Below are positions 1,546-62,681 of a stretch of DNA of 64,000 bases, piece by piece (position 1 is the stretch's first letter; each line of letters begins with the position of its first letter). This DNA is from Dendrobates tinctorius (Eukaryota), in contig NW_027361924.1 of the NCBI RefSeq assembly GCF_039654945.1, forward strand, positions 682,001 through 746,000, written 5' to 3'. The notes under the pieces are model-generated. The model saw only the letters and a program-made list of their open reading frames with translations. It searched no databases and had not been told where the DNA came from. The position numbers and the translations under genes are program-made.

Positions 1546-2589
1546 TAAATCTCAAGCAAATAATCCTCCACCCTCAGACGTAAGAGATTTTGTTTGTCAG
1601 GAGCATTTCCGAGAAGCAGGTGACAATCTGGTATCTGACTCCACATCCTTCAAGGATAGTTTCATATTAGCTGTAACAAGGCTGATTTCCCCGCAGACGG
1701 CTTAGGTGCATGCCGCCTGGCAGGTGTAGGGTGACTTCACCTCTGCTGCATCACCTGCTGGTGGATTTTTCACTTGCAACTATTTTACAATACACATACT
1801 TGATGTGTTAGGTATACTTTTTTTATTAATTAATATTGTTATTATTTTTTATAAGGTATGCATAAGGGAAGCATTAACCAGCACTAGGGGCCCGTTTAAA
1901 GGGAATCCAATTTTTTGCTCTCCCTTCTGAGAACAGCATGATGAAGTGGCAAAGACCCCGATTCCAGTGATGTATCACTTACAAGGCTGTTTGCTGCAGT
2001 TTTGTTAAAATCACAGTTTTCTCTGCTGCAGATCTAGCAGAGCTCGGAATGCTGAGCCACGTATAACCCCGCTCACACCACTAATTGGCTACTTTCTGTG
2101 TACACTGTGCATAGGTAGAAAGCTGTCAATCAATGATGGAGGTAGTGTTATACATAGCAAATGTATATGGAGGACTAAATAACAGCAGTTTTACTAGTCC
2201 TCCAGTTAGAATCTCCTTCTGATAAAACTATGATTTTATCAAAACTACAGCAAACAGCCCAGTAAGAAGTATTCAGGAGAAACGCGGCAATTACACCAGG
2301 TCAAACAAATTAGATATTTAGGGAAAGTGACAAGTCTATTAAAAGTGGTTGTCTAGGACTTTTTTTTTTGCTATGTGCTTAATATCAACAGGCAGGTAGT
2401 TGCCAGCAGAGGCAATTACCCACCTGTTCTACCCAGCTCCTGCTGACAATTCAGCTGCTCCACGTCAACAGAGCAGCTCTTCTTCTTCCAGGCTGCCCTG
2501 TCGACAGGGCATGAAAGCCAACATTATGCTGATTGACAGCTGGCTCCCCACAGTTAGGCAGCAGGGAGCCAGCTTTCAATCAGCATGAT

Positions 2590-2757
2590 TCCATGTTTGC
2601 GTGGGTTTCTTCGGATTCCTCCCACATTCCAAAGACATACTGATAGGGAATTTAGATTGTGAGCCCCATCTGGGACAGTGCCAATAATGTCTGTAAAGCG
2701 CTGTGGAATTAATGGCGCTATATAAATGAGTAAAATAAATATTAATAAAATAAATTT
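2590..2757 (+). mobile_element. SINE fragment (V-SINE-like core with L2-type 3' tail)
   Basis: GCGTGGGTTTC...CCTCCCACATTCCAAAGACATAC core, then GGGAATTTAGATTGTGAGCCCC...TGTAAAGCGCTG...GCGCTATATAAA tail. Related tails recur at ~8330 and ~26690. Confidence 0.65.
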
Positions 2758-2792
2758 CGAGAGTCACACCCCGTCAACAGAGCAGAAGAGAA

Positions 2793-3547
2793 AACACAAA
2801 AATTGAGCTTGGTTTGAGTTGGTACACATGCAGCATATGATTGCATGTTCACATGGCCAAAAAGCATACAAAACCTACAAAAGACAAAATGAAAAAACCC
2901 TGCTGTAATTAAATAAGTAAAAAGCAAAAGTGCATTTAAATCATACAGAGTTCTTAGTAATACTGTATTTGATCAAACATAGCATAAAAGCCGTCCCACC
3001 ATCGACAAGGTGACTCTGTGGTCGGGGCGGTCCTACACTGTCTAGTATTAAAAACCTTATCATGTGTCAATGTTGACATCTGTGTGAATAAGGGCAGACA
3101 AGGACCGGGTCCCAACCACTGGACACCAGTCAGGGGAAGCCTTTAAATACAATTCCCAGCTCAGGAGAGGGAGGCCACACCCCAGCTTGCACAGAATGTG
3201 TTTTTTCTTTGTATTTTTGCATTCTGTGCAAGCTGGGGTGTGGCCTCCCTCTCCTGAGCTGGGAATTGTATTTAAAGGCTTCCCCTGACTGGTGTCCAGT
3301 GGTTGGGACCCGGTCCTTGTCTGCCCTTATTCACACAGATGTCAACATTGACACATGATAAGGTTTTTAATACTAGACAGTGTAGGACCGCCCCGACCAC
3401 AGAGTCACCTTGTCGATGGTGGGACGGCTTTTATGCTATGTTTGATCAAATACAGTATTACTAAGAACTCTGTATGATTTAAATGCACTTTTGCTTTTTA
3501 CTTAATTATAGCAGGGTTTTTTTCATTTTGTCTTTTGTAGGTTTTGT
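2793..3547. mobile_element. Head-to-head inverted insertion with 14-bp TSD (probable Penelope-like pLTR fragments)
   Basis: Near-perfect arms 2867-3198 / 3220-3548 with a 21-nt spacer. Direct repeat AGAGCAGAAGAGAA at 2779-2792 and 3548-3561. The Penelope assignment is inferred from architecture only. Confidence 0.6.
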
Positions 3548-4454
3548 AGAGCAGAAGAGAAGCAGCTGTTCTGTCGACCTTACGTCAGCGGCGATCTGTG
3601 ACCCCTATGTGCCGGCAGAGATCGGCGCCAGGCACAACAGGCAGGTGGGTAACAACTATCTGCCTGTTAGATCTTTGGCCTATAGTAAAAATAAATTGTC
3701 CTGGATAACCATTTATTGGGATAATGGCACAACCATATTTAATAAATCCTGAAAACCACAAGTACCATAACACCTCTCTGTAGAGCCACCACTTACGTAA
3801 CGTTTAGTGAGTTTTTCTCTGAGGTTTCGCTGCATATCTAGGGTAGCTCCATGTCTGCTGTGTCCTGGATACATGGATTACAACGTGGTGACTTGTCTTA
3901 AAGAACATGTGTAAGGAGGACAGATTCCCTCCAGCCTCTTCTCTCATTTTTATCATAATGAGCTCTTGCAACTTTCAGATTCATGTTATGGAATGAGGAA
4001 ACAATACATCATTGTATCCATTGTGATTTTCCCGTGGTCTGGTGGATTTGTTTTTTCAAGGACAACCTCCTCAAACCACAGCAAGTTTCTACCGCTTCTT
4101 GGGGTATAGTCACAGGACATCTTTTCTACAAACCCACCAAATTTTTGAAAGGGAAAGAAGCTTTAGGACAATGCCTGTGATCTATTTCCTGAAGCATTTT
4201 CATTGACGTTTCTTCCATCCTCTTTGTAGCGGCTCCGACACCGGCAATGTTTTGTTTTGTAATTTAAACTTAAAAAGTCACCAAAAGAACGAACGTCTTT
4301 TAACTACTTCCTGCTTTGAAAGCCTGAAGCGTTTAAAAGAAATTACAAAAGATGGCACATATGCACAGCGAGTCATTATTATAGTGCTTTGCATTATTTC
4401 CTTTTTTACTGCTTACAGCAGAATCCGCCTGAAAAAGACACAACCTGGGCTTCC

Positions 4455-7800: not shown

Positions 7801-9460
7801 GACTCGATATGCAAATCCCCAACCTCATTGTAAGCATGTGTTACATTATAATATATATATATATATATGGTAAATTAAAATACTTTTGTAATTCAGTTTA
7901 ATTAAAAAATATGCACTGTTTGCCTTCTATAGACTCTATATTGCATATTTCTGGCTGCAGAATGGGTTAACTGAGAATCTGTAAGTGAGCGCCTAACAAC
8001 TCAATAGCTGAGCTTCTGACTCTTTTTAAAAAATATAAGTGTTAAATTTTGAGACCATTAAATCCGCCTCAGTTTTGTAGTCATTAAATTTGCATAAAAA
8101 ACTGAGGCGGATAAAATGGCAACAAAATTTGTAAACAGGGGGTATAATATAGAAAACTTGAAAATTATTTAAAAAAAATCTAAAAAAGCAAAAAAAAACA
8201 AAACACTAAAGGAGACTGGAAATTTCAAAAGAGAAACTATTGGAAGATGGATCAAAGACACAAAATGAATCTAAAACAACCATTCCACAAATAATCATTC
8301 CGATTCTAACATAACGCTGATGATGCAGCCAATAATGTCTGTAAAGCGCTGTGGAATTAATGGCGCTATATAAGTGAGTAAAATAAATAAATACAGGAAT
8401 ACTCAAACATGTAATAACAATGCACAGGAGAATGCTACAGCACGCGACAACAATAGATCTTTTACTTACTAAACCCAGATTAATGGATAGGAAGCCATGT
8501 AACAGGAAATTTAGTAGCCCCCACGGGACAAAATAGTAATCGCATCTGGAATAAATCACGATTTTCTGATTGAAAACTTTTTTTTTCCATGCAAAAGATG
8601 TAAGGCGTGACGTATGCCGAAAACTAACAAAAGTGAAAAAGAATTTAGCATCAATGAGCGGAATGTGAACTTCCATACCTGCATGTTATATATTCTTTTA
8701 AAGGGGCAATATATCGTTTTCAGACATTTATTACCTAAGCACCCTATAACCAAACATGGGGAATCATATATAGGATCTACATTATGGGGTCTACAAACAG
8801 TTAGAACCCCCTGGAAAGGGGGAGACAATATAGCACAAATGTCGCACAGTGAAAGTCGGTGGCTCTTTGATCTAGATACACTTGCACTGAGAAGTCTAAA
8901 TAATGAAAATGAAGTATTTGCCTTTGAATAAAGCAATCTAGTAGGGGGATAGACTTCCAGTACCGGCCATGGCATCCCTGATGAAAGAAAACGTATTTCC
9001 ATAACACTATCACTATTCTGGGACTGCCAGCAATTGTCTATAACCCGAGGATCACTTTGTCAACTGTTCATTTCCCTTGCAGCACACCCGCAGGAGAAAT
9101 TAAGTATTACACAGTCCTCATAGAAGTTAATTGACTGTCTGTGGAATGTTTGGATATGTGGAGTCCTCCAGAGCTGGGGGCGCGCTGTGTAATGAACATC
9201 CAGATGAAGATACCCCTTTGGAAACCCTTAGTAGAGTATATGTTCATAGCCTTCCTGAACCAGATTCATATAATATGACATCAGGGCTAGAATCAGGGTT
9301 TGCTCATCCACGCATATAAATTGGACCAGTGCAATCAGATAAAAACTTCAGATTGCACTCGGACCAATGTTATTCTATGAGACAGCGCAGATCGGCAGAC
9401 TTTTCTCAGCCATATTCGGAAACTTTGAAATCGGAGAGTGCAAAATTAAAATCACACGGC

Positions 9461-12400
9461 ATACGGACCATCAGTACGGTATCCGCTGTATACGGACCAT
9501 CAGTTCGGTATCCGCTGTATACGGACCATCAGTGCGGCGTCCGCTGTATACGGACCATCAGTACGGTGTCCGCTGTATACGGACCATCAGTGCAGTATCC
9601 GCTGTATACGGACCATCAGTATGGTATCCGCTGTATACGGACCATCAGTGCGGCGTCCGCTGTATACGGACAATCAGTGCGGTATCCGTTGTATACGGAC
9701 CATCAGTATGGTATCCGCTGTATATGGACCATCAGTATGGTATCCGCTGTATACGGACCATCAGTGCGGTATCCGCTGTATACGGACCATCAGTGCGGTA
9801 TCCGCTGTATACGGACCATCAGTGCGGCGTCCGCTGTATACGGACAATCAGTGCGGTATCCGCTGTATACGGACCATCAGTATGGTATCCGCTGTATACG
9901 GACCATCAGTATGGTATCCGCTGTATACGGACCATCAGTGCAGTATCCACTGTATACGGACCATCAGTATGGTATCCGCTGTATACGGACCATCAGTGCG
10001 GCGTCCGCTGTATACGGACAATCAGTGCGGTATCCGCTGTATATGGACCATCAGTACGGTGTCCGCTGTATACGGACCATCAGTGCGGTATCCGCTGTAT
10101 ACGGACCATCAGTGCGGTGTCCGCTGTATACGGACCATCAGTGCGGCGTCCGCTGTATACGGACAATCAGTGCGGTATCCGCTGTATACGGACCATCAGT
10201 ATGGTATCCGCTGTATACGGACCATCAGTGCGGCGTCCGCTGTATACTGACAATCAGTATGGTATCCGCTGTATACGGACCATCAGTATGGTATCCGCTG
10301 TATACGGACCATCAGTATGGTATCCGCTGTATACGGACCATCAGTACGGTGTCCGCTGTATACGGACCATCAGTGCAGTATCCGCTGTATACGGACCATC
10401 AGTATGGTATCCGCTGTATACGGACCATCAGTGCGGTATCCGCTGTATACGGACCATCAGTGCGGCGTCCGCTGTATACGGACAATCAGTGCGGTATCCG
10501 CTGTATACGGACCATCAGTATGGTATCCGCTGTATACGGACCATCAGTACGGTATCCGCTGTATACGGACCATCAGTGCGGCATCCGCTGTATACGGACC
10601 ATCAGTATGGTATCCGCTGTATACGGACCATCAGTATGGTATCCGCTGTATACGGACCATCAGTATGGTATCCGCTGTATACGGACCATCAGTATGGTAT
10701 CCGCTGTATACGGACCATCAGTATGGTATCCGCTGTATACGGACCATCAGTACGGTATCCGCTGTATACGGACCATCAGTACGGTATCCGCTGTATACGG
10801 ACCATCAGTACGGTGTCCGCTGTATACGGACCATCAGTATGGTGTCCGCTGTATACGGACCATCAGTATGGTATCCGCTGTATACGGACCATCAGTACGG
10901 TATCCGCTGTATACGGACCATCAGTACGGCGTCCGCTGTATACGGACCATCAGTATGGTATCTGCTGTATACGGACCATCAGTATGGTATCCGCTGTATA
11001 CGGACCATCAGTGCGGTATCCGCTGTATACGGACCATCAGTGCGGCGTCCGCTGTATACGGACCATCAGTGTGGTGTCCGCTGTATACGGACCATCAGTG
11101 TGGTGTCCGCTGTATACGGACCATCAGTACGGCGTCCGCTGTATACGGACCATCAGTACGGCGTCCGCTGTATACGGACCATCAGTACGACGTCCGCTGT
11201 ATACGGACCATCAGTACGGCATCCGCTGTATACGGACCATCAGTACGGTATCCGCTGTATACGGACCATCAGTACGCTATCCGCTGTATACGGACCATCA
11301 GTACGGTATCCGCTGTATACGGACCATCAGTGCGGTATCCGCTGTATACGGACCATCAGTACGGTATCCGCTGTATACGGACCATCAGTGCGGCGTCCGC
11401 TCTATACGGACCATCAGTTCGGTATCCGCTGTATACGGACCATCAGTGCGGCGTCCGCTGTATACGGACCATCAGTACGGTGTCCGCTGTATACGGACCA
11501 TCAGTGCAGTATCCGCTGTATACGGACCATCAGTATGGTATCCGCTGTATACGGACCATCAGTGCGGCGTCCGCTGTATACGGACAATCAGTGCGGTATC
11601 CGTTGTATACGGACCATCAGTATGGTATCCGCTGTATATGGACCATCAGTGCGGTATCCGCTGTATACGGACCATCAGTATGGTATCCGCTGTATACGGA
11701 CCATCAGTACGGTATCCGCTGTATACGGACCATCAGTATGGTATCCGCTGTATACGGACCATCAGTACGGTATCCGCTGTATACGGACCATCAGTGCGGT
11801 ATCCGCTGTATACGGACCATCAGTATGGTATCCGCTGTATACGGACCATCAGTGTGGTATCCGCTGTATACGGACCATCAGTATGGTATCCGCTGTATAC
11901 GGACCATCAGTACGGTATCCGCTGTATACGGACCATCAGTACGGTATCCGCTGTATACGGACCATCAGTACGGTATCCGCTGTATACGGACCATCAGTAC
12001 GGTATCCGCTGTATACGGACCATCAGTACGGTATCCGCTGTATATGGACCATCAGTACGGTATCCGCTGTATACGGACCATCAGTACGGTATCCGCTGTA
12101 TACGGACCATCAGTACGGTATCCGCTGTATACGGACCATCAGTACGGTATCCGCTGTATACGGACCATCAGTACGGTATCCGCTGTATACGGACCATCAG
12201 TACGGTATCCGCTGTATACGGACCATCAGTACGGTATCCGCTGTATACGGACCATCAGTATGGTATCCGCTGTATACGGACCATCAGTATGGTATCCGCT
12301 GTATACGGACCATCAGTATGGTATCCGCTGTATACGGACCATCAGTACGGTATCCGCTGTATACGGACCATCAGTACGGTATCCGCTGTATACGGACCAT

Positions 12401-13064
12401 CAGTACGGTATCCGCTGTATACGGACCATCAGTATGGTATCCGCTGTATACGGACCATCAGTACGGTATCCGCTGTATACGGACCATCAGTACGGTATCC
12501 GCTGTATACGGACCATCAGTACGGTATCCGCTGTATACGGACCATCAGTACGGTATCCGCTGTATACGGACCATCAGTACGGTATCCGCTGTATACGGAC
12601 CATCAGTACGGTATCCGCTGTATACGGACCATCAGTACGGTATCCGCTGTATACGGACCATCAGTACGGTATCCGCTGTATACGGACCATCAGTACGGTA
12701 TCCGCTGTATACGGACCATCAGTACGGTATCCGCTGTATACGGACCATCAGTACGGTATCTGCTGTATACGGACCATCAGTACGGTATCCGCTGTATACG
12801 GACCATCAGTACGGTATCCGCTGTATACGGACCATCAGTACGGTATCCGCTGTATACGGACCATCAGTACGGTATCCGCTGTATACGGACCATCAGTACG
12901 GTATCCGCTGTATACGGACCATCAGTACGGTATCCGCTGTATACGGACCATCAGTATGGTATCCGCTGTATACGGACCATCAGTACGGTATCCGCTGTAT
13001 ACGGACCATCAGTACGGTATCCGCTGTATACGGACCATCAGTACGGTATCCGCTGTATACGGAC
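9461..13064. repeat. 29-bp CpG-rich minisatellite, ~124 copies
   Basis: Unit TATACGGACCATCAGTACGGTATCCGCTG. Three units give the 29-aa period seen in the long ORF translations. Confidence 0.97.
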
Positions 13065-13384
13065 AAGTTACAATTCTGTAAAATCGGAAACTGTAAAGGG
13101 TCGTGTAAAAGGGAGTAAAAAAACGGATTGTATACGGATGACAAGTGAGAAAAATGGTCCCACTCTCCTGGCTGAGAATGGGGCCGATTACACGAGTGAA
13201 CGTACCTTTAGGGCGAGTGACAAAGTCTCCCCCTGTTCTTACATCAGACCAGGCTTTTTTTTAACATTGTTTTCTCTGCGCTTTAAGAAATCACATGATG
13301 AGGAAAACAAGGAATTACCCATCGGCCTGAAGGTTGAGTCTTTTACTTCCTCCAAGGAATGTTTCTTCCTTGAGTCAGTAACTT

Positions 13385-13432
13385 CTGATTGGTGGAATAA
13401 TTATAGCCCGGCACCGCACAATATTATAAAGA
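13385..13432 (+). promoter_or_regulatory. Putative NOXO1 core promoter (inverted CCAAT and TATA box)
   Basis: ATTGG at 13388-13392 and TATAAA at 13425-13430, about 50 nt upstream of the ATG at 13477. Confidence 0.55.
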
Positions 13433-13476
13433 GCGGCTACCACTGTCAATAATCATAACCTAGGCTTGATTACAAG

Positions 13477-35712: not shown

Positions 35713-36605
35713 GGCTATGTGCCCACGTAGCGTTTTAAACCGGACACTCAAAACCGGACTCCTTCCCAGAAAACGCGCTTTTTTTCCGCGCGATTTTACC
35801 GGGATTATGTTCGCGATTTTCGTGTGCGAAATTCAAGCACTTTCCAAGCGTTTTGAAGCATCGCTTGGAAAGTGATTGACAGGTTGGTCACACTCGTCAA
35901 ACATAGTGTTTGACAAGTGTGACCAGGTTTTTACTATTGAGGCCGCCTATGCGGCCTCAATAGTAAAAGATAGAATATTAAAAATGATTAAAAAAAATCG
36001 GGGTATATTCACCTTCCGACGTCCCGCGCAGTCTCAGCGGCGCTCCCGTTCCCAGTAATGCCTTGCGAGACCTGTGATGACGTTGGTCTCGCGTTGCTAT
36101 AGCGATCTCACGAGACCGCTAGAGTCACGCGAGACTACGTCATCACAGGGCCTTGCCGCAAGGCATTACTGGGAACGGGAGCGCCGCTGAGACTGCGCGG
36201 GACGTCGGAAGGTGAATATACCCCGATTTTTTATTTTTTTACAGGGGTATGGTACCCAGGGCCTGGAGGACAGTCTCCTCTCCTCCACACCGTGGGTACC
36301 AACCGCACATGAGACGCTTAACTTCGCGCATGGTGGGCATAGCCACATGCGGGAAGTAAGCGATTCTCATGCATTCCTAGAGGTGCGGAATCGCGGCAAT
36401 TCTTTGCGATTCCGCAAAAAGAATGAGCATGCTGTGTTTTTTTCCACAATGCGATTCCGCCGCGGAAAAAAGCGCAGCATTAGTACAGCATGTGCGGAAT
36501 GCCATAGGAATGCATGGTGTGGGTTCTGTACGAGTTTTTTTTAACCATTTCCGCACCAAAAATCGCGGCAAAAACGCTTAAAAGTCGCATCGTGGGCACA
36601 CAGCC
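35713..36605. mobile_element. PIF/Harbinger-type MITE with internal palindrome
   Basis: TIRs GGCTATGTGCCCACG / CGTGGGCACACAGCC with TAA duplicated. Inner hairpin at ~35985-36240. Same family as the elements at 60147 and 62873. Confidence 0.75.
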
Positions 36606-42200: not shown

Positions 42201-45200
42201 ATTAGTCCCCAATCCCCACAATTTTAAGCGTGTCCTGAAAACGCATTTATTCAGACTGGCCTATCGCCTCAACACATTAACCTAACCTATCCCTGTGTGG
42301 CAGAGCCAAAAGTTTTACCATAACCAGGTTCCCAGCATCATGTTCCCACATGCTTTATGCATCCATTAGCCCTCTGTGTCTGTACTGTTACACACTTATC
42401 ATTATGGCTGGTCCATACAATCAGGGCAACTGTTACCACCCACCTTTCGTGTCTACCTCTTTCCTCATAGACTGTAAGCTTGCGAGCAGGGCCCTCATTC
42501 CTCTTGGTATTTGTTATAATCTACTGTATGTGATTATTGTTATGCTGTAATGTCTATTGTCTGTACAAATCCCCTCTGAAATGTAAAGTGCTGCGGAATA
42601 TGTCGGCGCTATAAAAATAAAATGTATTATTATTATTATTATTAAATAACCAGAAAAAACATAGATGTCCATAAATTAAGTGGTGTGTAAGAATGAGAAA
42701 TTACAAAGGGGAAAAAGTATTGAACATATGAAGAAAAAGGTGCAAAAAGCCATGGAAAGTCCTGACACCATCTGAAATCTATCAGTAATTAGAAAGCACT
42801 ATTGCCACTTAATGAAATATCTACTGATTCAACTGATGACCTATAAAAGTGTCTCATCAACAAGGTGCCACAAAATAAATATAGTGTGTAAAACCAGTGA
42901 GCTCTCTCAAGACCTTCACAGCCTTATTGTTACAAAAAATACTCATGGCATTGATTTACAGAAGAATTTCTTATTTACTGAAGGTCCCAGTGAGCACTAG
43001 TGGGGTCATAATCCGTAAGTAGAAAAACATCATTTCACTATAAAGTGCAAAACCAATAACTTCAAAGAAAACTACACTGCTCAAAAAAATAAAAGGAACA
43101 CTTAACACAATGTAACTCCAAGTCAATCACACTTCTGTGAAATCAAACTGTCCACTTAGGAAGTAACACTAATTGACAATTTCACATTCTGTTGTGCAAA
43201 TGGAATAGACAACAGATGGAAGTTATTGGCAATTATCAAGACACCCTCAATAAAGGAGTGGTTCTGCAGGTGGGGACCACAGACCACATCTCAGTACCAA
43301 TGCTTTCTGGCTGATGTTTTGGTCACTTTTGAATGTTGGTTGTGCTTTCATAATCGTGGTAGCATGAGACGGACTCTACAACCCACACAAGAGTATATGA
43401 TAATGCCCAGTATCAGAGAACGAGACAAGGCGGTGACCATGGTCCAAAAACGCCTTGTGCATGGATTACCACTCCATATGCTAATCTTAAAAAGGAGAAA
43501 ACGGAGTAACGGATACAAAATATATGCAAAAGTATAAATGTTATTAATACTCACATCAAGTGCTGACAAGTATACAAGTTGACTAAAATAGGGGGGATAA
43601 GCCCCAATGATACAACAATCAGGACAGACAAGGACAGGGTAAATAAAATGATACCAGTGCTCGAAATCTACATGGCACAACGTTCAGTCAGCCCATGGGC
43701 ATTGCACATAACAGACATGTGTCTAATGGTAAAAGATAGTCAAATATGGCATACTCAATTAAATGTGTATTGTACATAGTTGTACATGTCCAGAGCGCCA
43801 AAAAAAAAAAAAACCATCCAGAGGGGTCAATGTGCAAGTCCAATGGACACTGAACATAAATGAATCAATGACATGTGGAAGGATTCTTACATAGTAAATA
43901 ACATATGTATCAACATATCAAAACTGCGCAATTGTGCCAGAGAGAACCCGGGAGACGACCCGCCCAGCGGTCCAAATGACCGAAGTGTGGAAACAAGTAA
44001 AGTCAGGCTGCTTACCGGGGAGCAGAGGAGGTGAAGGCCCATGCAACGACACCCGACGTACGTTTCGCGCCCGCCACAGGCGCTTTATCAAGGGAGTGTT
44101 GACTGAGGTGAACCACCATGTTTTTATGCAGAAAGACCTCCCACTTGAAAGCGGTCACATGGGGCAGGTCTACCAACCAAAGGCAGCGGACAGAGCATGC
44201 GCAGTGCAGCTCACTCAAACCAGGAAGTGATCAATAGTATGGTCACAAAAAAAAAAAAAAATATGGCGGGACAAAACCGCACTCATATAAAAACTAGATA
44301 GCATCGTTACCCTAGACGCCTGCGCAGTGTATTGCGTTGACAAAAAGTGTCAGAGCTCAATGAATGATAAAGATGTAATCAGACCATAATAGCGGCGCAT
44401 ACTCAGTGCAACACCTCAGTCCTCCAGGAGATGGGGCAGGCGTCACGCGTCAGGGAAAACAGAGGGAATTTAACCCCGTGTATAACCTGAGGCGGGCAGA
44501 CGCCCAAACCCATATCGGAGCAACGGGTGAGCGCAGGTATGCGCACTAAGGTCACAGCATAAAGAATCAGGAGAAGAAAATTAAGTAAAAAATAAAAAAT
44601 AAATAATAAACCAAGACAGACCATGGAGGAAATACAGTAAAGATAGTGACATCAATCATAATTGGGGCAAACAATATAAACACATTATATGATAGTGTAT
44701 GCTACCAAAAATCCAGAGCACCAGTAAGGATTGTAAAGGCACACAATAAGGTTGATGCAACAGTCCAGAAAATTTTTTTTTTTTTTTTTTTTTTCTTTTC
44801 CCCTTCTCTCCTTCTCTTTCCCCCTTCTTCCTTTCTCTTCTTCTTATATAGTAATAGACGAGTGACCCGAACACGATGGAGTGTCCGCATTCTCCATAAT
44901 ATCAATATGCCGTGAAACGATGATGAAGGTAGATATTCTTTCCAGATCCAACAGATAATAAACGCAGGCGTGGGTACGGACATCCAGAATAGAGGGGTCC
45001 ACACCACACAATGGTACCAGTGAGTCCACATGTAGCCAACACAGAAAACACAGGGAAACTAAAAAAATATATAAAAAGACAAAAAGTTAAAATCATACAA
45101 ACCGAATGTTGATAGGGCCTAAAAAAATGAAACAATGGTGAGTGCAGCGGAGACAGCAGAAGCTATAAAAATGAGGAGAAACTCAGAGATTCGTTAAGTC

Positions 45201-48200
45201 CTTTGGGGGTCATAGTATCCAGGGCGACGATCCACTTAGCCTCTCTCTGGGCCAACGCCTTTTTGTAATTTCCAGCTCGGATTCCCAAGTGTACACATTC
45301 AATACCTCTTACCATGAAGGACCCCGGGTCACAATCATGGGAGGATCTGAAGTGACGTGGGATGGTCTTAAGGGTAGTAGGATCGACCACTGTCTTGGCC
45401 GCCCGAATGTCCCTAACATGCTCACGAACTCTCACACGTAATTCTCTTGATGTGAGGCCCACATATATCAGTGGGCACCCACATGTCGCGTAGTATATGA
45501 CATTAGTACTACTGCAGGAAATGTGTTGTTTGATGTGAAAATCTTTTTCACCATCGGAGGACTGAAAGGAGGAGCAGCGAAGGACATTCGGGCAGGCAAC
45601 ACAGTGGCCGCAAGGAAAACACCCCCGAGTTGGACCAGTAGATCCAAAGGGGTTCGTTGTCGTCGCGATGTAATGGCTCTTGACCAAAAAATCCCTCAAG
45701 TTTCTACATCTTCTTGAAGTCATCAGAGGACGATCACCGATAACCTGGCCCAGAGATGGCTCCGAGCCAAGAATTGCCCAGTGTTTGGCCAAAATGCTCC
45801 TCATGTGTTCCCATTCATGATTGAAGGTAGAGATGAAACGTATTGGGGCAGATCCACCTGACTTAGCAGATCTCCCAGTATTATCACGCCTCGGATAAAG
45901 CAAGTCCCTACGGGCAGTAGCCCTGGCTCTACTGTAACCCTTTCGTATGCTCCTGTTACTATATCCCCGGTTGCGAAAACGAGTCTGTAGGTCCCTAGCT
46001 TGCCTTTCAAAACCATCCTCGGTGGAGCAGATCCGCCTCATCCTGAGGAACTGACCGACAGGAACGGCCCTGATGGTAGAGGTGTTATGTGCGGACTCGG
46101 CATGGAGTAAAGAGTTGACAGAAGTGGGCTTCCTGTACACGTCAGTCTGGATCCGGCGTGTATCGTCGATCTCCAGTGTGACGTCCAGGAAGTCAATAGT
46201 TTTAAGATCATATTTAAATGTCAATCTAATGTTAAAAGTATTAGCATTGAGCCATGCCATGAAGTCCCCGAGCTGCTGCAGTGTCCCGTCCCAAAAAAAT
46301 AAAACATCATCGATATAGCGGTGCCAGCACAGCACATGGGAAGCGGCCGGCGCGCCCTCGTCGCCAAAGATGGATCTCTCCCAGGCACCCAAGAAGAGAT
46401 TAGCGTACGAGGGCGCACAGGCCGCGCCCATCGCCGTGCCGCACCGCTGACGATAGAATTGATCTTTGAATACAAAAAAATTGTGGGTAAGGACAAACTG
46501 CAGCAGCTCAAGGAGTAGTCCACACATCGGGCCGTCCAGGTCGGACATCCCCAGGAAGAGGCGGACCGCATCCAAACCGAGGGTATGGTCAATACATGTA
46601 TAAAGGGACTCTACGTCCGCGGTCACCAGAAAGGTATGACCGTCCACAAGGACGCCGTCAACCCGCGTGAGGACGTCCGTTGTGTCTTTAATGTAAGATG
46701 GTAATGATTCAACCAGTGGTTTGAGGTAGAAGTCAAGAAATTTACATACTGGGTCGCAGAGCCCTTCAATACCAGACACAATCGGACGGCCAGGCGGCTC
46801 GACGGCGTCCTTGTGGATCTTAGGCAAGAGATAGAAGGTGGGTGTCTTTGGGGTTCGGACCATCAGCCCCTCAAAGACCGTTTTGGTTATAATACCCCCC
46901 TCCAAAGCTCGAACAAGAATACGCTGAAGGGAGAGCGAGAAGGAGGCAGTCGGGTTATAGGATAACCTTTCGTAAGTATTACGGTTTCTCAATTGCCTAT
47001 GTGCCTCACGTTCATACATATGTGTAGGCCATACCACGATATTCCCCCCCTTGTCAGCAGGTTTGAAAACCACCCCCGAAAGTGATTGTAATTCGGAGAT
47101 AGCCTTCCGCTGTCTCCATGTGAGGTTGTCAAATTTACGTCTAGATGGTAATTTTCTGAAATCCTCTGCGACTAGTTTTGTAAAAATGTCGATGGCGGGA
47201 CTGAGAGACAGGGGGGGGAATCTCGTGGATTTCGGCAAAACGTGTGGAGGAAACTTACTCCTACTTGGTGGTGTCTGCTCATCGAGAAGATCCTCCAAAA
47301 CTCGAAGTGCCTCCATCTCACTCTCCGTCAACGACTCCTGAGAGATATTCTTATGGTGTAGCTTGCGTAATAGTAGCTTTCTGGAGAACAGGTGAAGATC
47401 CTTCAGTGCTACAAAAAAGTTAAAAGGATTAGTGGGGGAGAAAGTCAGTCCACGACTCAAAACCTCCAACTGGGGTTGTGTAAGAGCATGTGTTGAGAGG
47501 TTAACTACCTGAAGGCCACCAGCTGAGTAATCAGTAAAATTGCGTCCGGTGTATGTCTTCTTTCTGGCAGATTGCCGTGTAACCACACGTTTAGTTACGG
47601 GGTCAGAGCTGGAGCTGAGGGTACCACCTGGATGAGACAGCTGCACCGATGCCTCGTCGTCAACAGAAACAGTGGATTTAATAGATGTAGATCTAGATCG
47701 AGAACGTGACATACTCCTATATAACTGTCTGGATCTATCAGGAGGATGGCGCCATCTGTACACATGGGCCGTTAATTTATCCTGTATATCTCGTTTGAGT
47801 TTCTTCGTCTTGGTTGCTTGTGTTTCTTGGGCCCATTTTTGGAGGTCAACATCAAGTTCATCGTTAAACTTTTTGAGTGATTCCCCAGTTAAGCCTTTTT
47901 GTAAATCCAATTGAATAATTTCGATCTCACTCTCGAGAAGAGTAAGCGTTTTTTTATTTTGTGTTTTCAATAGGTCCAAAAAACCCATAGAACATACATT
48001 GGCCAACTCCTCCCACTTGGCTTTGAAATCATCATCCTGAATGGGGAAAGAGGGGAAGACCTGGATACGCAGACCCCTAGGGATAAGATTATTCTGAATA
48101 TATTTGTCAAGAAATTCATGGTTCCACCATATGCGTGTGCGTTTCCTGAGCAGATCTCTGAATTTCAACATAGCTGCTTGATTTTAACTTTTTGTCTTTT

Positions 48201-51200
48201 TATATATTTTTTTAGTTTCCCTGTGTTTTCTGTGTTGGCTACATGTGGACTCACTGGTACCATTGTGTGGTGTGGATCCCTCTATTCTGGATGTCCGTAC
48301 CCACGCCTGCGTTTATTATCTGTTGGATCTGGAAAGAATATCTACCTTCATCATCGTTTCACGGCATATTGATATTATGGAGAATGCGGACACTCCATCG
48401 TGTTCGGGTCACTCGTCTATTACTATATAAGAAGAAGAGAAAGGAAGAAGGGGGAAAGAGAAGGAGAGAAGGGGAAAAGAAAAAAAAAAAAAGATTTTCT
48501 GGACTGTTGCATCAATCTTATTGTGTGCCTTTACAATCCTTACTGGTGCTCTGGATTTTTGGTAGCATACACTATCATATAATGTGTTTATATTGTTTGC
48601 CCCAATTATGATTGATGTCACTATCTTTACTGTATTTCCTCCATGGTCTGTCTTGGTTTATTATTTATTTTTTATTTTTTACTTGTTTTTTTTTTTGTTT
48701 TTTTTTTTTAATTTTCTTCTCCTGATTCTTTATGCTGTGACCTTAGTGCGCATACCTGCGCTCACCCGTTGCTCCGATATGGGTTTGGGCGTCTGCCCGC
48801 CTCAGGTTATACACGGGGTTAAATTCCCTCTGTTTTCCCTGACGCGTGACGCCTGCCCCATCTCCTGGAGGACTGAGGTGTTGCACTGAGTATGCGCCGC
48901 TATTATGGTCTGATTACATCTTTATCATTCATTGAGCTCTGACACTTTTTGTCAACGCAATACACTGCGCAGGCGTCTAGGGTAACGATGCTATCTAGTT
49001 TTTATATGAGTGCGGTTTTGTCCCGCCATTTTTTTTTTTTTTTTGTGACCATACTATTGATCACTTCCTGGTTTGAGTGAGCTGCACTGCGCATGCTCTG
49101 TCCGCTGCCTTTGGTTGGTAGACCTGCCCCATGTGACCGCTTTCAAGTGGGAGGTCTTTCTGCATAAAAACATGGTGGTTCACCTCAGTCAACACTCCCT
49201 TGATAAAGCGCCTGTGGCGGGCGCGAAACGTACGTCGGGTGTCGTTGCATGGGCCTTCACCTCCTCTGCTCCCCGGTAAGCAGCCTGCCTTTACTTGTTT
49301 CCACACTTCGGTCATTTGGACCGCTGGGCGGGTCGTCTCCCGGGTTCTCTCTGGCACAATTGCGCAGTTTTGATATGTTGATACATATGTTATTTACTAT
49401 GTAAGAATCCTTCCACATGTCATTGATTCATTTATGTTCAGTGTCCATTGGACTTGCACATTGACCCCTCTGGATGGTTTTTTTTTTTTGGCGCTCTGGA
49501 CATGTACAACTATGTACAATACACATTTAATTGAGTATGCCATATTTGACTATCTTTTACCATTAGACACATGTCTGTTATGTGCAATGCCCATGGGCTG
49601 ACTGTATGTTGTGCCATGTAGATTTCGAGCACTGGTATCATTTTATTTACCCTGTCCTTGTCTGTCCTGATTGTTGTATCATTGGGGCTTATCCCCCCTA
49701 TTTTAGTCAACTTGTATACTTGTCAGCACTTGATGTGAGTATTAATAAAATTTATACTTTTGCATATATTTTGTATCCGTTACTCCGTTTTCTCCTTTTT
49801 AAGATTAGCATATGGAGTGGTAATCCATGCACAAGGCGTTTTTGGACCATGGTCACCGCCTTGTCTCGTTCTCTGATACTGGGCATTATCATATATGTAT
49901 TGATTGTATCTGTGTTTTTCACAGAATTTTCCTGCCCGAATATGGATTTTCGTGCACGTGACACGACGTGGCGTGCGCAGCTTAATGATGCTCTCCAGGA
50001 CAGTAGTGGCGGGGACACTGGTGGTTGCAGCGGTGATATGCAAGCAGCTATGTTGAAATTCAGAGATCTGCTCAGGAAACGCACACGCATATGGTGGAAC
50101 CATGAATTTCTTGACAAATATATTCAGAATAATCTTATCCCTAGGGGTCTGCGTATCCAGGTCTTCCCCTCTTTCCCCATTCAGGATGATTTCAAAGCCA
50201 AGTGGGAGGAGTTGGCCAATGTATGTTCTATGGGTTTTTTGGACCTATTGAAAACACAAAATAAAAAAACGCTTACTCTTCTCGAGAGTGAGATCGAAAT
50301 TATTCAATTGGATTTACAAAAAGGCTTAACTGGGGAATCACTCAAAAAGTTTAACGATGAACTTGATGTTGACCTCCAAAAATGGGCCCAAGAAACACAA
50401 GCAACCAAGACGAAGAAACTCAAACGAGATATACAGGATAAATTAACGGCCCATGTGTACAGATGGCGCCATCCTCCTGATAGATCCAGACAGTTATATA
50501 GGAGTATGTCACGTTCTCGATCTAGATCTACATCTATTAAATCCACTGTTTCTGTTGACGACGAGGCATCGGTGCAGCTGTCTCATCCAGGTGGTACCCT
50601 CAGCTCCAGCTCTGACCCCGTAACTAAACGTGTGGTTACACGGCAATCTGCCAGAAAGAAGACATACACCGGACGCAATTTTACTGATTACTCAGCTGGT
50701 GGCCTTCAGGTAGTTAACCTCTCAACACATGCTCTTACACAACCCCAGTTGGAGGTTTTGAGTCGTGGACTGACTTTCTCCCCCACTAATCCTTTTAACT
50801 TTTTTGTAGCACTGAAGGATCTTCACCTGTTCTCCAGAAAGCTACTATTACGCAAGCTACACCATAAGAATATCTCTCAGGAGTCGTTGACGGAGAGTGA
50901 GATGGAGGCACTTCGAGTTTTGGAGGATCTTCTCGATGAGCAGACACCACCAAGTAGGAGTAAGTTTCCTCCACACGTTTTGCCGAAATCCACGAGATTC
51001 CCCCCCCTGTCTCTCAGTCCCGCCATCGACATTTTTACAAAACTAGTCGCAGAGGATTTCAGAAAATTACCATCTAGACGTAAATTTGACAACCTCACAT
51101 GGAGACAGCGGAAGGCTATCTCCGAATTACAATCACTTTCGGGGGTGGTTTTCAAACCTGCTGACAAGGGGGGGAATATCGTGGTATGGCCTACACATAT

Positions 51201-54200
51201 GTATGAACGTGAGGCACATAGGCAATTGAGAAACCGTAATACTTACGAAAGGTTATCCTATAACCCGACTGCCTCCTTCTCGCTCTCCCTTCAGCGTATT
51301 CTTGTTCGAGCTTTGGAGGGGGGTATTATAACCAAAACGGTCTTTGAGGGGCTGATGGTCCGAACCCCAAAGACACCCACCTTCTATCTCTTGCCTAAGA
51401 TCCACAAGGACGCCGTCGAGCCGCCTGGCCGTCCGATTGTGTCTGGTATTGAAGGGCTCTGCGACCCAGTATGTAAATTTCTTGACTTCTACCTCAAACC
51501 ACTGGTTGAATCATTACCATCTTACATTAAAGACACAACGGACGTCCTCACGCGGGTTGACGGCGTCCTTGTGGACGGTCATACCTTTCTGGTGACCGCG
51601 GACGTAGAGTCCCTTTATACATGTATTGACCATACCCTCGGTTTGGATGCGGTCCGCCTCTTCCTGGGGATGTCCGACCTGGACGGCCCGATGTGTGGAC
51701 TACTCCTTGAGCTGCTGCAGTTTGTCCTTACCCACAATTTTTTTGTATTCAAAGATCAATTCTATCGTCAGCGGTGCGGCACGGCGATGGGCGCGGCCTG
51801 TGCGCCCTCGTACGCTAATCTCTTCTTGGGTGCCTGGGAGAGATCCATCTTTGGCGACGAGGGCGCGCCGGCCGCTTCCCATGTGCTGTGCTGGCACCGC
51901 TATATCGATGATGTTTTATTTTTTTGGGACGGGACACTGCAGCAGCTCGGGGACTTCATGGCATGGCTCAATGCTAATACTTTTAACATTAGATTGACAT
52001 TTAAATATGATCTTAAAACTATTGACTTCCTGGACGTCACACTGGAGATCGACGATACACGCCGGATCCAGACTGACGTGTACAGGAAGCCCACTTCTGT
52101 CAACTCTTTACTCCATGCCGAGTCCGCACATAACACCTCTACCATCAGGGCCGTTCCTGTCGGTCAGTTCCTCAGGATGAGGCGGATCTGCTCCACCGAG
52201 GATGGTTTTGAAAGGCAAGCTAGGGACCTACAGACTCGTTTTCGCAACCGGGGATATAGTAACAGGAGCATACGAAAGGGTTACAGTAGAGCCAGGGCTA
52301 CTGCCCGTAGGGACTTGCTTTATCCGAGGCGTGATAATACTGGGAGATCTGCTAAGTCAGGTGGATCTGCCCCAATACGTTTCATCTCTACCTTCAATCA
52401 TGAATGGGAACACATGAGGAGCATTTTGGCCAAACACTGGGCAATTCTTGGCTCGGAGCCATCTCTGGGCCAGGTTATCGGTGATCGTCCTCTGATGACT
52501 TCAAGAAGATGTAGAAACTTGAGGGATTTTTTGGTCAAGAGCCATTACATCGCGACGACAACGAACCCCTTTGGATCTACTGGTCCAACTCGGGGGTGTT
52601 TTCCTTGCGGCCACTGTGTTGCCTGCCCGAATGTCCTTCGCTGCTCCTCCTTTCAGTCCTCCGATGGTGAAAAAGATTTTCACATCAAACAACACATTTC
52701 CTGCAGTAGTACTAATGTCATATACTACGCGACATGTGGGTGCCCACTGATATATGTGGGCCTCACATCAAGAGAATTACGTGTGAGAGTTCGTGAGCAT
52801 GTTAGGGACATTCGGGCGGCCAAGACAGTGGTCGATCCTACTACCCTTAAGACCATCCCACGTCACTTCAGATCCTCCCATGATTGTGACCCGGGGTCCT
52901 TCATGGTAAGAGGTATTGAATGTGTACACTTGGGAATCCGAGCTGGAAATTACAAAAAGGCGTTGGCCCAGAGAGAGGCTAAGTGGATCGTCGCCCTGGA
53001 TACTATGACCCCCAAAGGACTTAACGAATCTCTGAGTTTCTCCTCATTTTTATAGCTTCTGCTGTCTCCGCTGCACTCACCATTGTTTCATTTTTTTAGG
53101 CCCTATCAACATTCGGTTTGTATGATTTTAACTTTTTGTCTTTTTATATATTTTTTTAGTTTCCCTGTGTTTTCTGTGTTGGCTACATGTGGACTCACTG
53201 GTACCATTGTGTGGTGTGGACCCCTCTATTCTGGATGTCCGTACCCACGCCTGCGTTTATTATCTGTTGGATCTGGAAAGAATATCTACCTTCATCATCG
53301 TTTCACGGCATATTGATATTATGGAGAATGCGGACACTCCATCGTGTTCGGGTCACTCGTCTATTACTATATAAGAAGAAGAGAAAGGAAGAAGGGGGAA
53401 AGAGAAGGAGAGAAGGGGAAAAGAAAAAAAAAAAAAAAAAGATTTTCTGGACTGTTGCATCAATCTTATTGTGTGCCTTTACAATCCTTACTGGTGCTCT
53501 GGATTTTTGGTAGCATACACTATCATATAATGTGTTTATATTGTTTGCCCCAATTATGATTGATGTCACTATCTTTACTGTATTTCCTCCATGGTCTGTC
53601 TTGGTTTATTATTTATTTTTTATTTTTTACTTGTTTTTTGTTTTTTTTTTTTAATTTTCTTCTCCTGATTCTTTATGCTGTGACCTTAGTGCGCATACCT
53701 GCGCTCACCCGTTGCTCCGATATGGGTTTGGGCGTCTGCCCGCCTCAGGTTATACACGGGGTTAAATTCCCTCTGTTTTCCCTGACGCGTGACGCCTGCC
53801 CCATCTCCTGGAGGACTGAGGTGTTGCACTGAGTATGCGCCGCTATTATGGTCTGATTACATCTTTATCATTCATTGAGCTCTGACACTTTTTGTCAACG
53901 CAATACACTGCGCAGGCGTCTAGGGTAACGATGCTATCTAGTTTTTATATGAGTGCGGTTTTGTCCCGCCATATTTTTTTTTTTTTTTTTTGTGACCATA
54001 CTATTGATCACTTCCTGGTTTGAGTGAGCTGCACTGCGCATGCTTTGTCCGCTGCCTTTGGTTGGTAGACCTGCCCCATGTGACCGCTTTCAAGTGGGAG
54101 GTCTTTCTGCATAAAAACATGGTGGTTCACCTCAGTCAACACTCCCTTGATAAAGCGCCTGTGGCGGGCGCGAAACGTACGTCGGGTGTCGTTGCATGGG

Positions 54201-62549: not shown

Positions 62550-62681
62550 TAGTGTAGGAACACGGGTCTCATTACACACATATAGGTTATGGGTAATGAG
62601 CTAAATGCTCCCAATTCCTGTAGGCACAGTGATCTTACTAAAGGCTACGAAGAGGCCAGAAGTAATTTTCAGTTTGTGCCA
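62550..62681 (-). ncRNA. SNORA78: H/ACA box snoRNA, SNORA78 (ACA64) orthologue
   Basis: Hairpin 1 GGCACA..TGTGCC, H box ACAGGA, hairpin 2 GGGAGCA..CTCATTAC..GTAATGAG..TGTTCCT, then ACA plus 3 nt; 132 nt in total. The 5' pocket ACUGAAAAU / AGAUCA complements the 28S rRNA segment UGAUCU-UG-AUUUUCAGU (recalled, not searched). It lies ~76 nt upstream of a 3' splice site and has the same strand and order relative to RNF151/TBL3 as in human. Confidence 0.85.

What the first reader, a model, noticed from the sequence alone, without database searches (positions are those of the whole stretch)
2779..3561. A miniature of the same insertion geometry 40 kb away
Seen: a 14-bp TSD (AGAGCAGAAGAGAA), ~330-bp near-perfect inverted arms, a 21-nt spacer and a 74-nt left-only overhang. 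Read outward, the overhang ends in TTTTTGTGTTTTC, resembling the pre-acceptor tract TCTGTGTTTTTCACAG of the large pLTR. The 11.4-kb composite also has a 14-bp TSD and a ~90-nt left-only overhang ending just before the acceptor. No sequence similarity between the two is evident. Inference: this is not a MITE but a doubly primed, heavily truncated insertion from a second Penelope family. That would suggest a general mechanism, with a ~14-nt stagger and offset second priming, that produces palindromes in frog genomes.
Basis: partly seen in the sequence, partly recalled or inferred. Interest (0 to 1): 0.7.

Follow-up and report, generated by a model that had tools for sequence, protein, structure and literature searches.

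The report
Two-armed retroelement insert in frog DNA
A 755-base non-coding insert made of two head-to-head copies of an abundant 420-base frog repeat carries the insertion scar already described for Penelope-like retroelements, so it is a clean but fairly ordinary example of a known kind.

Summary
An identical 14-bp duplication (2779-2792, 3548-3561) flanks a 755-bp insert: a 74-nt left-only end, inverted arms of 332 and 329 nt (inner 289 nt identical) and 21 nt between them.

Public reads show the insert belongs to a very abundant family, roughly thousands of copies. Other copies join the outer left end directly to the "spacer", so the family is a 420-nt unit arranged head to tail. Both the spacer and the overhang are family sequence. 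Each arm therefore holds family sequence that the other lacks. This excludes a MITE and simple snap-back, and supports two separate reverse-transcription events, one on each nicked strand.

This layout (duplication, tail, arm, inverted arm, duplication) is the published Penelope-like signature (PMC3846280, PMC8557442, PMC11167929). The genuine Penelope composite 40 kb away has it too, with a 14-bp duplication and a 91-nt tail.

Not supported: "heavily truncated" (the arms are 406 and 352 of 420 nt), any hammerhead, any link to an RT/GIY-YIG ORF, and the T-tract resemblance.

New here: the two arms map to one contiguous 1.8-unit stretch of tandem RNA. The top-strand primer end pairs with the RNA next to its start site. 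This looks like twin priming on a multimeric transcript.

Other windows of this genome were already noted with the same architecture.

The parts
2779..2792 (.). Target-site duplication, left copy (14 bp). Its 3' end GAAGAGAA is the inferred top-strand primer.
   Evidence: Paralogous empty sites, table 5c. Primer pairing.
2793..2866 (-). The 74-nt 'tail': family sequence present only on the left arm (unit positions 347-420). Its outer end is start site S2.
   Evidence: It has high family depth, and the contigs of run X13 start at 2792 (tables 2 and 8).
2867..3198 (-). Left arm, with sense on the minus strand. Together with the tail it forms a 406-nt cDNA copy of unit positions 18-420.
3197..3198 (.). 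A 2-nt microhomology (TG) where the two 5'-side ends are joined.
   Evidence: with the family junction inferred from the joints.
3199..3219 (+). The 'spacer'. It is not filler. It continues the right arm in the 5' direction and holds the last 4-6 nt of the preceding unit plus unit positions 1-17.
   Evidence: joints 2794/2798/2799 <-> 3197/3201, and run X13 record 24..
3220..3547 (+). Right arm, with sense on the plus strand. Together with 3197-3219 it forms a cDNA copy of about 351 nt that ends at start site S1 (unit position 345). Base 3548 could belong to the arm or to the duplication.
3548..3561 (.). Target-site duplication, right copy (14 bp).
2390..3700 (.). Host element: a moderately repeated MITE-like element with inverted ends. 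Both the palindrome and a SINE (2590-2762) inserted into it.
   Evidence: sequence; depth table, joint 2436<->3653 on opposite strands, and skips 2588/2589->2762.

Best explanation
The insert is one retrotransposition event of a non-coding, very abundant frog repeat. The repeat unit is 420 nt and normally lies head to tail.

Proposed steps:
1. An endonuclease cut both strands of the target 14 bp apart.
2. Each freed 3' end primed reverse transcription of the repeat's RNA.
3. The bottom-strand primer started at site S1, without homology. It made the right arm, about 351 nt, running 4-6 nt past the unit boundary.
4. The top-strand primer started 74 nt further along the unit, at S2, and made the left arm, 406 nt.
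5. The two cDNA ends were joined head to head at a 2-nt microhomology.

Because the template is a tandem or multimeric RNA, the two oppositely primed copies are homologous, so the product is a palindrome. The 'tail' and the 'spacer' are simply the parts that each cDNA has and the other lacks.

The machinery is most likely a Penelope-like RT/GIY-YIG protein acting in trans, as proposed for animal retrozymes. This family, however, has no hammerhead.

Sub-claim (about 50% if the main claim holds): both arms were copied from one RNA molecule, as adjacent monomers. The second primer annealed by 8 base pairs just 3' of S2. This is twin priming as described for L1.

Shown: the anatomy, family membership, head-to-tail junction, duplication and primer pairing. 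Inferred: the RNA intermediate, which enzyme acted, and the one-RNA model.
For: - An exact 14-bp duplication sits at the insert ends. Paralogous host-MITE copies carry the motif once (table 5c).
- Summed depth over 2786-3541 is 20,000-110,000, against about 9.5 on the single-copy flank. It drops at 2785/2786 and at 3541/3542 (table 2).
- Joints 2794/2798/2799 <-> 3197/3201 occur in three runs. In run X13 two contigs (386 nt and 98 nt, depths 38 and 42) close a circle of about 420 nt (tables 5 and 8). This shows a head-to-tail unit, with the spacer belonging to the right arm.
- Each arm has family sequence that the other lacks: 74 nt on the left, 17-21 nt on the right.
- Both arms share variants that 85-99.8% of the family depth lacks (3071/3347, 3155/3263, 3078/3340). 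The C/T difference (2905, G>A in 54-67% of family depth) and probably the indel (variants at 3501) fall at sites where the family itself varies (tables 3 and 4). This fits neighbouring monomers from one source.
- The left arm's 3' start (position 420) and the right arm's 5' end (position 415-417) abut on the unit. A random end would do so about 13 times in 420.
- The top-strand primer end GAAGAGAA pairs fully (Watson-Crick plus G-U) with UUUUCUUU immediately 3' of the first copied base. Only 2 of 420 positions allow this.
- The genuine PLE composite in the window has the same layout: a YIDD reverse-transcriptase motif, a CX2CX2C cysteine motif and a GIY-YIG motif, a 14-bp duplication and a 91-nt one-sided tail.
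- Literature: an inverted 5'-truncated copy plus a one-sided tail is the PLE signature (PMC3846280, PMC8557442). A purified PLE protein cuts and extends both strands from two internal start sites, and the tail is the sequence between them (PMC11167929). Non-LTR retrozymes are proposed to be PLE non-autonomous derivatives (bioRxiv 10.64898/2026.07.22.740005).
Against: - Nothing links this family directly to a PLE. There is no RT/GIY-YIG ORF, no similarity to the window's PLE and no hammerhead. Rfam at E<=10 found nothing, and no CUGANGA occurs on either strand of the circular dimer.
- The tail is 74 nt, against 30-40 nt in the literature.
- The abutment and the primer pairing were noticed after the fact in a single insertion.
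- The large PLE composite shows neither feature.
- The X13 contigs of two subfamilies both break at 2792. This hints that S2 is a fixed, recurrent end, which favours the published two-start-site model over microhomology-guided twin priming.
- A 14-bp duplication and twin priming are also typical of L1-type LINEs.
- No RNA evidence was obtained.
Confidence: 0.65

Rival explanations
1. The same two-primer retrotransposition, but carried out by a LINE (L1-, CR1- or L2-type) reverse transcriptase acting in trans on a transcript of the tandem repeat. This would be classic twin priming, not a Penelope-like enzyme.
For: A 14-bp duplication, abutting inverted and direct segments, primer microhomology and a microhomology join are the hallmarks of L1 twin priming. 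That statement about L1 is from general knowledge, not checked in a paper here.
Against: There is no poly(A) or LINE-type 3' repeat at either outer end. The first start site shows no homology to its primer. The family's dominant head-to-tail arrangement and the identical geometry of the neighbouring PLE point to PLE machinery.
Confidence: 0.12
2. A single priming event followed by snap-back. One cDNA folded back on itself and copied itself, producing the second arm.
For: The inner 289 nt are 100% identical, and a short loop-like stretch lies between the arms. Self-priming has been proposed for PLE palindromes (PMC3846280).
Against: Each arm carries family sequence that the other lacks. The 74-nt tail is only on the left, and the 17-21 nt upstream stretch belongs, in sense, to the right arm. 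So neither arm can be a pure copy of the other. The arms also differ at a site (2905), and probably a second (the indel), where the family itself varies.
Confidence: 0.07
3. DNA-level capture. A fragment of satellite DNA or extrachromosomal circular DNA was patched into a staggered double-strand break, with a fold-back rearrangement.
For: The family is satellite-like: tandem and very abundant. No RNA intermediate is demonstrated.
Against: The precise 14-bp duplication is the same length as that of the PLE 40 kb away. The primer end pairs exactly at the start of the copied sequence. The outer ends sit at unit positions where other copies also end: the X13 contigs break at 2792, and an X12 contig diverges at 2862.
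Confidence: 0.08
4. A foldback element or long-TIR MITE moved by a DNA transposase.
For: It has long, near-perfect inverted arms and is non-coding.
Against: A 14-bp duplication is longer than those I know for DNA transposon superfamilies. The arms are unequal at both ends. Other copies are head-to-tail units, not fixed-length TIR elements.
Confidence: 0.03
5. An assembly artefact, with a palindrome created by the assembler.
For: Palindromes and tandem or inverted PLE structures are hard to assemble (PMC8557442). No read spanning the centre was seen here.
Against: An exact duplication flanks the structure. The asymmetric ends are made of genuine family sequence. An independent short-read contig spans the right junction without a difference (record 8).
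Confidence: 0.03

Closest known systems
Penelope-like element (PLE) insertion architecture: pLTR tandems, an inverted 5'-truncated copy and a one-sided 'tail' (Arkhipova et al. 2013, PMC3846280; Craig et al. 2021, PMC8557442; Frangieh et al. 2024, PMC11167929)
   Same: A duplication flanks the whole unit. The two copies lie head to head with their 3' ends outward. An extension is present at one end only. Other copies are head to tail. A TATA-like motif lies inside the unit. The mechanism fits the in vitro finding that both strands are cut and extended from two start sites.
   Different: There is no RT/GIY-YIG ORF and no detectable hammerhead. The tail is 74 nt rather than 30-40. One primer pairs with the template, whereas non-homologous initiation was reported in vitro.
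Animal non-LTR retrozymes (Cervera & de la Pena 2020, PMC7229834; Li, Clavereau & Pollet 2026, bioRxiv 10.64898/2026.07.22.740005)
   Same: A non-coding unit of a few hundred nt, in tandem arrays, in high copy number, with duplications longer than 4 bp. Mobilisation by PLEs is proposed.
   Different: The defining type I hammerhead ribozyme is absent. Circular RNA was not tested.
L1 twin priming, which produces inverted and 5'-truncated L1 insertions (Ostertag & Kazazian 2001; cited from memory, not read here)
   Same: The second-strand nick primes internally on the same RNA by microhomology. The two cDNAs abut with a few nt of overlap and are joined by microhomology. The duplication is about 14 bp.
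   Different: There is no poly(A). The template is a tandem repeat, so the product is a palindrome rather than a simple inversion. The enzyme is probably not L1.
Non-autonomous Chlamys/PLE derivatives such as MRC1 in Chlamydomonas (PMC8557442)
   Same: Non-coding, forming pLTRs and multicopy head-to-tail insertions. Their autonomous relatives, the Chlamys/Naiad PLEs, lack a canonical hammerhead.
   Different: A different host kingdom. Similarity of this family's 3' end to an autonomous partner is not shown here.

Membership tests
PLE-type insertion (structural signature) | A target-site duplication flanks the whole, possibly composite, insert | tested here: met
   A 14/14 repeat lies at both ends. 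Paralogous empty sites are seen, table 5c.
PLE-type insertion (structural signature) | An inverted copy lies head to head, with 3' ends facing outward | tested here: met
   The arms are 2867-3198 and 3220-3548. Orientation is inferred from the head-to-tail junction of the family.
PLE-type insertion (structural signature) | A short extension ('tail') is present at one end only | tested here: met
   2793-2866 is 74 nt of family sequence on the left only. It is longer than the published 30-40 bp.
PLE-type insertion (structural signature) | Other copies lie in tandem or partial tandem (pLTR-like) | tested here: met
   Head-to-tail joints occur in X1, X5 and X13, and the X13 contigs close into a circle.
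Penelope-like element (as a family member) | An ORF with a PLE reverse transcriptase and a GIY-YIG endonuclease, in this copy or in family masters | tested here: not met
   This copy has no ORF above 61 aa. Protein look-ups were blank. A master copy elsewhere in the genome could not be searched for.
Penelope-like element (as a family member) | A hammerhead ribozyme in the pLTR (canonical clades) | tested here: not met
   Rfam at E<=10 gave none. There is no CUGANGA on either strand of the circular dimer. The genuine PLE in the window also gave none by the same tests, so this feature is a weak discriminator here.
Non-LTR retrozyme | A type I hammerhead ribozyme in each unit | tested here: not met
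Non-LTR retrozyme | A short non-coding unit in tandem arrays, in high copy number | tested here: met
Non-LTR retrozyme | Expressed as circular RNA | not testable with these tools
   Only contigs were available, and no run is on record as RNA.
MITE / foldback DNA transposon | Fixed-length copies bounded by terminal inverted repeats, with a short duplication of fixed length | tested here: not met
   Other copies are head-to-tail units. The arms are unequal at both ends. The duplication is 14 bp.
L1-type twin priming | The inverted and direct segments are contiguous on the RNA, with internal priming by microhomology | tested here: met
   Abutment with 4-6 nt of overlap. An 8-bp primer pairing that only 2 of 420 sites allow.
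L1-type twin priming | A poly(A) tail at the 3' junction | tested here: not met
   The right junction reads ...GGTTTTGT|AGAGCAG.

The most novel reading that the evidence does not exclude
The palindromes left by Penelope-type machinery may arise by twin priming on a single multimeric transcript. The second nicked strand anneals to the RNA about one unit upstream of the first start site. The first cDNA runs up to that point. Because the template is a tandem repeat, the inverted 5' part and the direct 3' part are homologous, so the product is a palindrome. Tail length would then be set by unit length and primer pairing, not only by two fixed start sites. The family would also be a hammerhead-less counterpart of animal retrozymes.
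Probability: 0.3. Interest if true: 0.5.

Novelty: new member of a known kind. Interest (0 to 1): 0.32.

Why it matters
The insert itself is a junk-DNA event with no sign of function. Its value is as a very clean, young, fully resolvable example of the two-armed Penelope-type insertion scar.

Each arm keeps sequence that the other lacks, which argues for two independent priming events and against snap-back. The arms map to adjacent monomers of one tandem RNA, with primer pairing at the second start. If this recurs genome-wide, it would link the published in vitro result (both strands extended) to a concrete in vivo pathway. It would also explain why PLEs and retrozyme-like repeats so often form palindromes.

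The case also shows that an abundant, tandem, retrozyme-like frog family can use this scar without a hammerhead ribozyme.

Tried and rejected
- Hammerhead or other ribozyme. Rfam at gathering score on the whole window and at E<=10 on 2300-3900 gave only generic miRNA-hairpin hits on the palindrome centre. A regex for the hammerhead core on the circular dimer found nothing.
- Positive control on the large PLE. Rfam at E<=10 on its pLTR and regex scans also found no canonical hammerhead. Absence is therefore weakly informative.
- tRNA-like or SINE head: none.
- Internal tandem repeats: none.
- RNA structure. The unit folds only marginally better than shuffles, with z -1.7 for sense and -1.2 for antisense. 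There is no viroid-like rod.
- Other copies in the window: none.
- Host-MITE paralogue in the window, to serve as an empty site: none.
- Fetching other copies through protein look-ups of arm ORFs, and through a 25-mer scan of metagenome and viral contigs: all blank.
- Other short-spacer inverted repeats in the window (I13, I16, I17, I20, I25): none has a flanking duplication or tail. A window-level table of duplication and tail lengths therefore has only two rows.
- Testing the one-RNA twin-priming model on the large composite. Its arm ends do not abut, and neither primer pairs with the template.
- The weak 24-nt match to the large pLTR (inspected) was judged to be chance.

Full report
**1. 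Observation**

Reading 2600-3750 and the repeat finder confirm each feature.

- The 14-mer AGAGCAGAAGAGAA occurs at 2779-2792 and 3548-3561.
- The inverted arms are 2867-3198 and 3220-3548. Their inner 289 nt (2910-3198 / 3220-3508) are 100% complementary.
- 21 nt (3199-3219) lie between the arms.
- 74 nt (2793-2866) lie between the left duplication and the left arm, with no counterpart on the right.
- The arms differ only in their outer 43 nt: a 4-nt indel, one C/T, and T6 versus T7. If these were random later mutations, all three falling there would have p about 0.002.
- A 14-mer repeated exactly at both ends of the insert is not chance (about 1e-6).
- The companion claim also holds. The 11.4-kb composite has AACCCACACAAGAG at 43380-43393 and 54758-54771, and a 91-nt left-only stretch at 43394-43484.
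- Its ORF carries YIDD, a CX2CX2C cysteine motif and a GIY-YIG motif, so it is a canonical endonuclease-bearing Penelope-like element.
- The two elements share no sequence.

**2. What the insert is made of**

Public contigs of four runs were laid on 2300-3900 at 80% likeness or more.

- The single-copy flank (3704-3900) has depth about 9.5 in run X1. The insert (2786-3541) has a summed depth of 20,000-110,000, with sharp drops at both insert ends. The tool warns that summed depth is not a copy number. As an order of magnitude, the family has thousands of copies.
- The 74-nt overhang is as deep as the arms, so it is family sequence.
- In X1, X5 and X13, contigs join 2794/2798/2799 to 3197/3201 on opposite strands. 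Read in one sense, this is the outer left end (...CAATTTTTGTGTT) followed directly by the 'spacer' and the start of the right arm (TTTTCTTTGTATTTTTG-CATTCTG...).
- In X13, a sample with little frog DNA where only consensus-level repeats assemble, a 386-nt contig (2792-3176, 7 differences, depth 38) and a 98-nt junction contig (depth 42) close a circle of about 420 nt.
- The family is therefore a 420-nt unit that mostly lies head to tail.
- The 21-nt 'spacer' is not filler. It is the 5' continuation of the right arm.
- The unit has no ORF above 61 aa, no tRNA-like part, no Rfam ribozyme at E<=10, no hammerhead core CUGANGA on either strand of the circular dimer and no unusually stable fold.
- It contains a GC box and a TATA-like motif (GGGGTGTGG ... 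TATTTAAAG). pLTRs of PLEs are reported to carry basal promoter motifs (PMC3846280). Whether this one acts as a promoter is inference only.

**3. The duplication is real**

The insert sits in a MITE-like host element (about 2390-3700), which also received a SINE at 2590-2762. Three paralogous copies of that MITE in public contigs cross the site with a single copy of the motif (table 5c). A 958-nt public contig with no differences spans the right junction (record 8).

**4. Anatomy in unit coordinates**

Set position 1 at 3203 (sense on the plus strand) and position 420 at the complement of 2793.

- The left arm plus tail is a 406-nt copy of positions 18-420.
- The right arm plus 'spacer' is a copy of about 351 nt, running from position 415-417 of one unit through position 345 of the next.
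- The two inner ends share TG (3197-3198).
- Each arm therefore has family sequence that the other lacks: 74 nt on the left and 17-21 nt on the right.
- This excludes a transposon with terminal inverted repeats. It also excludes simple snap-back, in which one arm is templated by the other.
- The C/T difference between the arms (2905) falls where the family depth is split about 50:50, and the indel falls in a stretch (around 3501) where family variants are also seen. Both arms nevertheless share variants that 85-99.8% of the family depth lacks: 3071/3347, 3155/3263 and 3078/3340 (tables 3 and 4).
- The simplest reading is two cDNAs made from closely related but not identical monomers, such as neighbours in one array transcript.

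**5. Mechanism**

With 3' ends outward and a 14-bp duplication, the plus-strand 3' end at 2792 and the minus-strand 3' end at 3548 each primed one cDNA. Two further observations bear on how.

- The left arm's first copied base (position 420) and the right arm's last copied bases (position 415-417) abut on the unit. The arms together therefore equal one contiguous 1.78-unit stretch of tandem RNA, with its 5' part inverted. A random end would do this about 13 times in 420.
- The top-strand primer end GAAGAGAA can pair (Watson-Crick plus G-U) with UUUUCUUU immediately 3' of the first copied base. Only 2 of 420 positions on the unit allow that.
- The bottom-strand primer shows no pairing at S1.

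This is the geometry of twin priming as known for L1. I cite that from memory and did not read a paper on it here. On a tandem template, it yields a palindrome automatically.

These two features were found after the fact in one insertion. The large PLE composite shows neither abutment nor pairing. The X13 contigs of two subfamilies both break at 2792, and an X12 contig diverges at 2862. These breaks hint that S2 and S1 are recurrent, fixed ends. I therefore hold the one-RNA model at about even odds against the published model of two fixed internal start sites.

**6. Comparison with what is known**

- Arkhipova et al. 2013 (PMC3846280) describe the typical Penelope insert: pLTRs plus an adjacent inverted pLTR, flanked by a duplication, with a 31-bp tail at the 3' end of one inverted pLTR.
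- Craig et al. 2021 (PMC8557442) describe the inverted 5'-truncated copy and a 30-40-bp tail, often at one end only. They also describe non-autonomous derivatives that form head-to-tail insertions, and PLE clades (Naiad, Chlamys) that lack canonical hammerheads.
- Frangieh et al. 2024 (PMC11167929) show that a purified PLE protein cleaves and extends both strands. Reverse transcription initiates at two adjacent internal sites that are not homologous to the target, and the tail is the sequence between them.
- Cervera & de la Pena 2020 (PMC7229834) and a 2026 preprint (10.64898/2026.07.22.740005) treat tandem hammerhead repeats of animals as non-autonomous PLE derivatives.

This insert works like a PLE-mobilised, retrozyme-like element. 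It fails the membership tests for a PLE (no ORF) and for a retrozyme (no hammerhead). A search for 'twin priming' together with 'Penelope' found only passing mentions.

**7. Earlier notes of this scan**

Searches list the same architecture in other windows of this genome. They include a two-armed 352-nt hammerhead retrozyme insert judged ordinary, a 404-nt tandem-unit element with no proven ribozyme, and several 13-14-bp duplications. I used these as leads only.

**8. Verdict**

This is a new member of a known kind, of modest interest. The one point worth following is whether two-armed copies genome-wide show the abutment and primer pairing seen here.

The 279 N in the window were left untouched.

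Noticed in passing
window 2390-3700: The host of the palindrome is a moderately repeated MITE-like element with inverted ends (joint 2436<->3653 on opposite strands). It also has internal inverted symmetry, including a 26-nt hairpin at 2523-2589. Paralogues lack both nested insertions.
   Followed up: partly
window 2590-2762: A very abundant frog SINE-like element, with summed depth up to about 1e6 against 9.5 for single copy. It is inserted in the same MITE, and paralogues skip 2589->2762.
   Followed up: partly
window 9316-13452: A 29-bp satellite of about 140 units. It generates spurious ORFs of up to 1361 aa in three frames.
   Followed up: no
window 62550-62677 (-): An H/ACA snoRNA, ACA64. 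It is a full-length Rfam match at 72.7 bits against a gathering score of 35.
   Followed up: no
window 43380-54771: The large Penelope composite shows no primer-to-template pairing at either outer end, which fits non-homologous internal initiation. It has no canonical hammerhead by Rfam (E<=10, 48100-50100) or by regex. Both 14-bp duplications in the window (this one and the small insert's) contain AAGAG near the 3' end.
   Followed up: partly
window 35992-36232: A perfect 76-nt inverted repeat with 89 nt between the arms. No flanking direct repeat of 8 nt or more was found within 160 nt.
   Followed up: partly
runs X12 and X13: The 420-nt family is also present in contigs labelled as other organisms. 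In organism C it is at about 87-89% identity. In organism D it is at 98% identity and low depth, with the same SINE-to-unit depth ratio as the frog, which suggests frog DNA within that sample.
   Followed up: no
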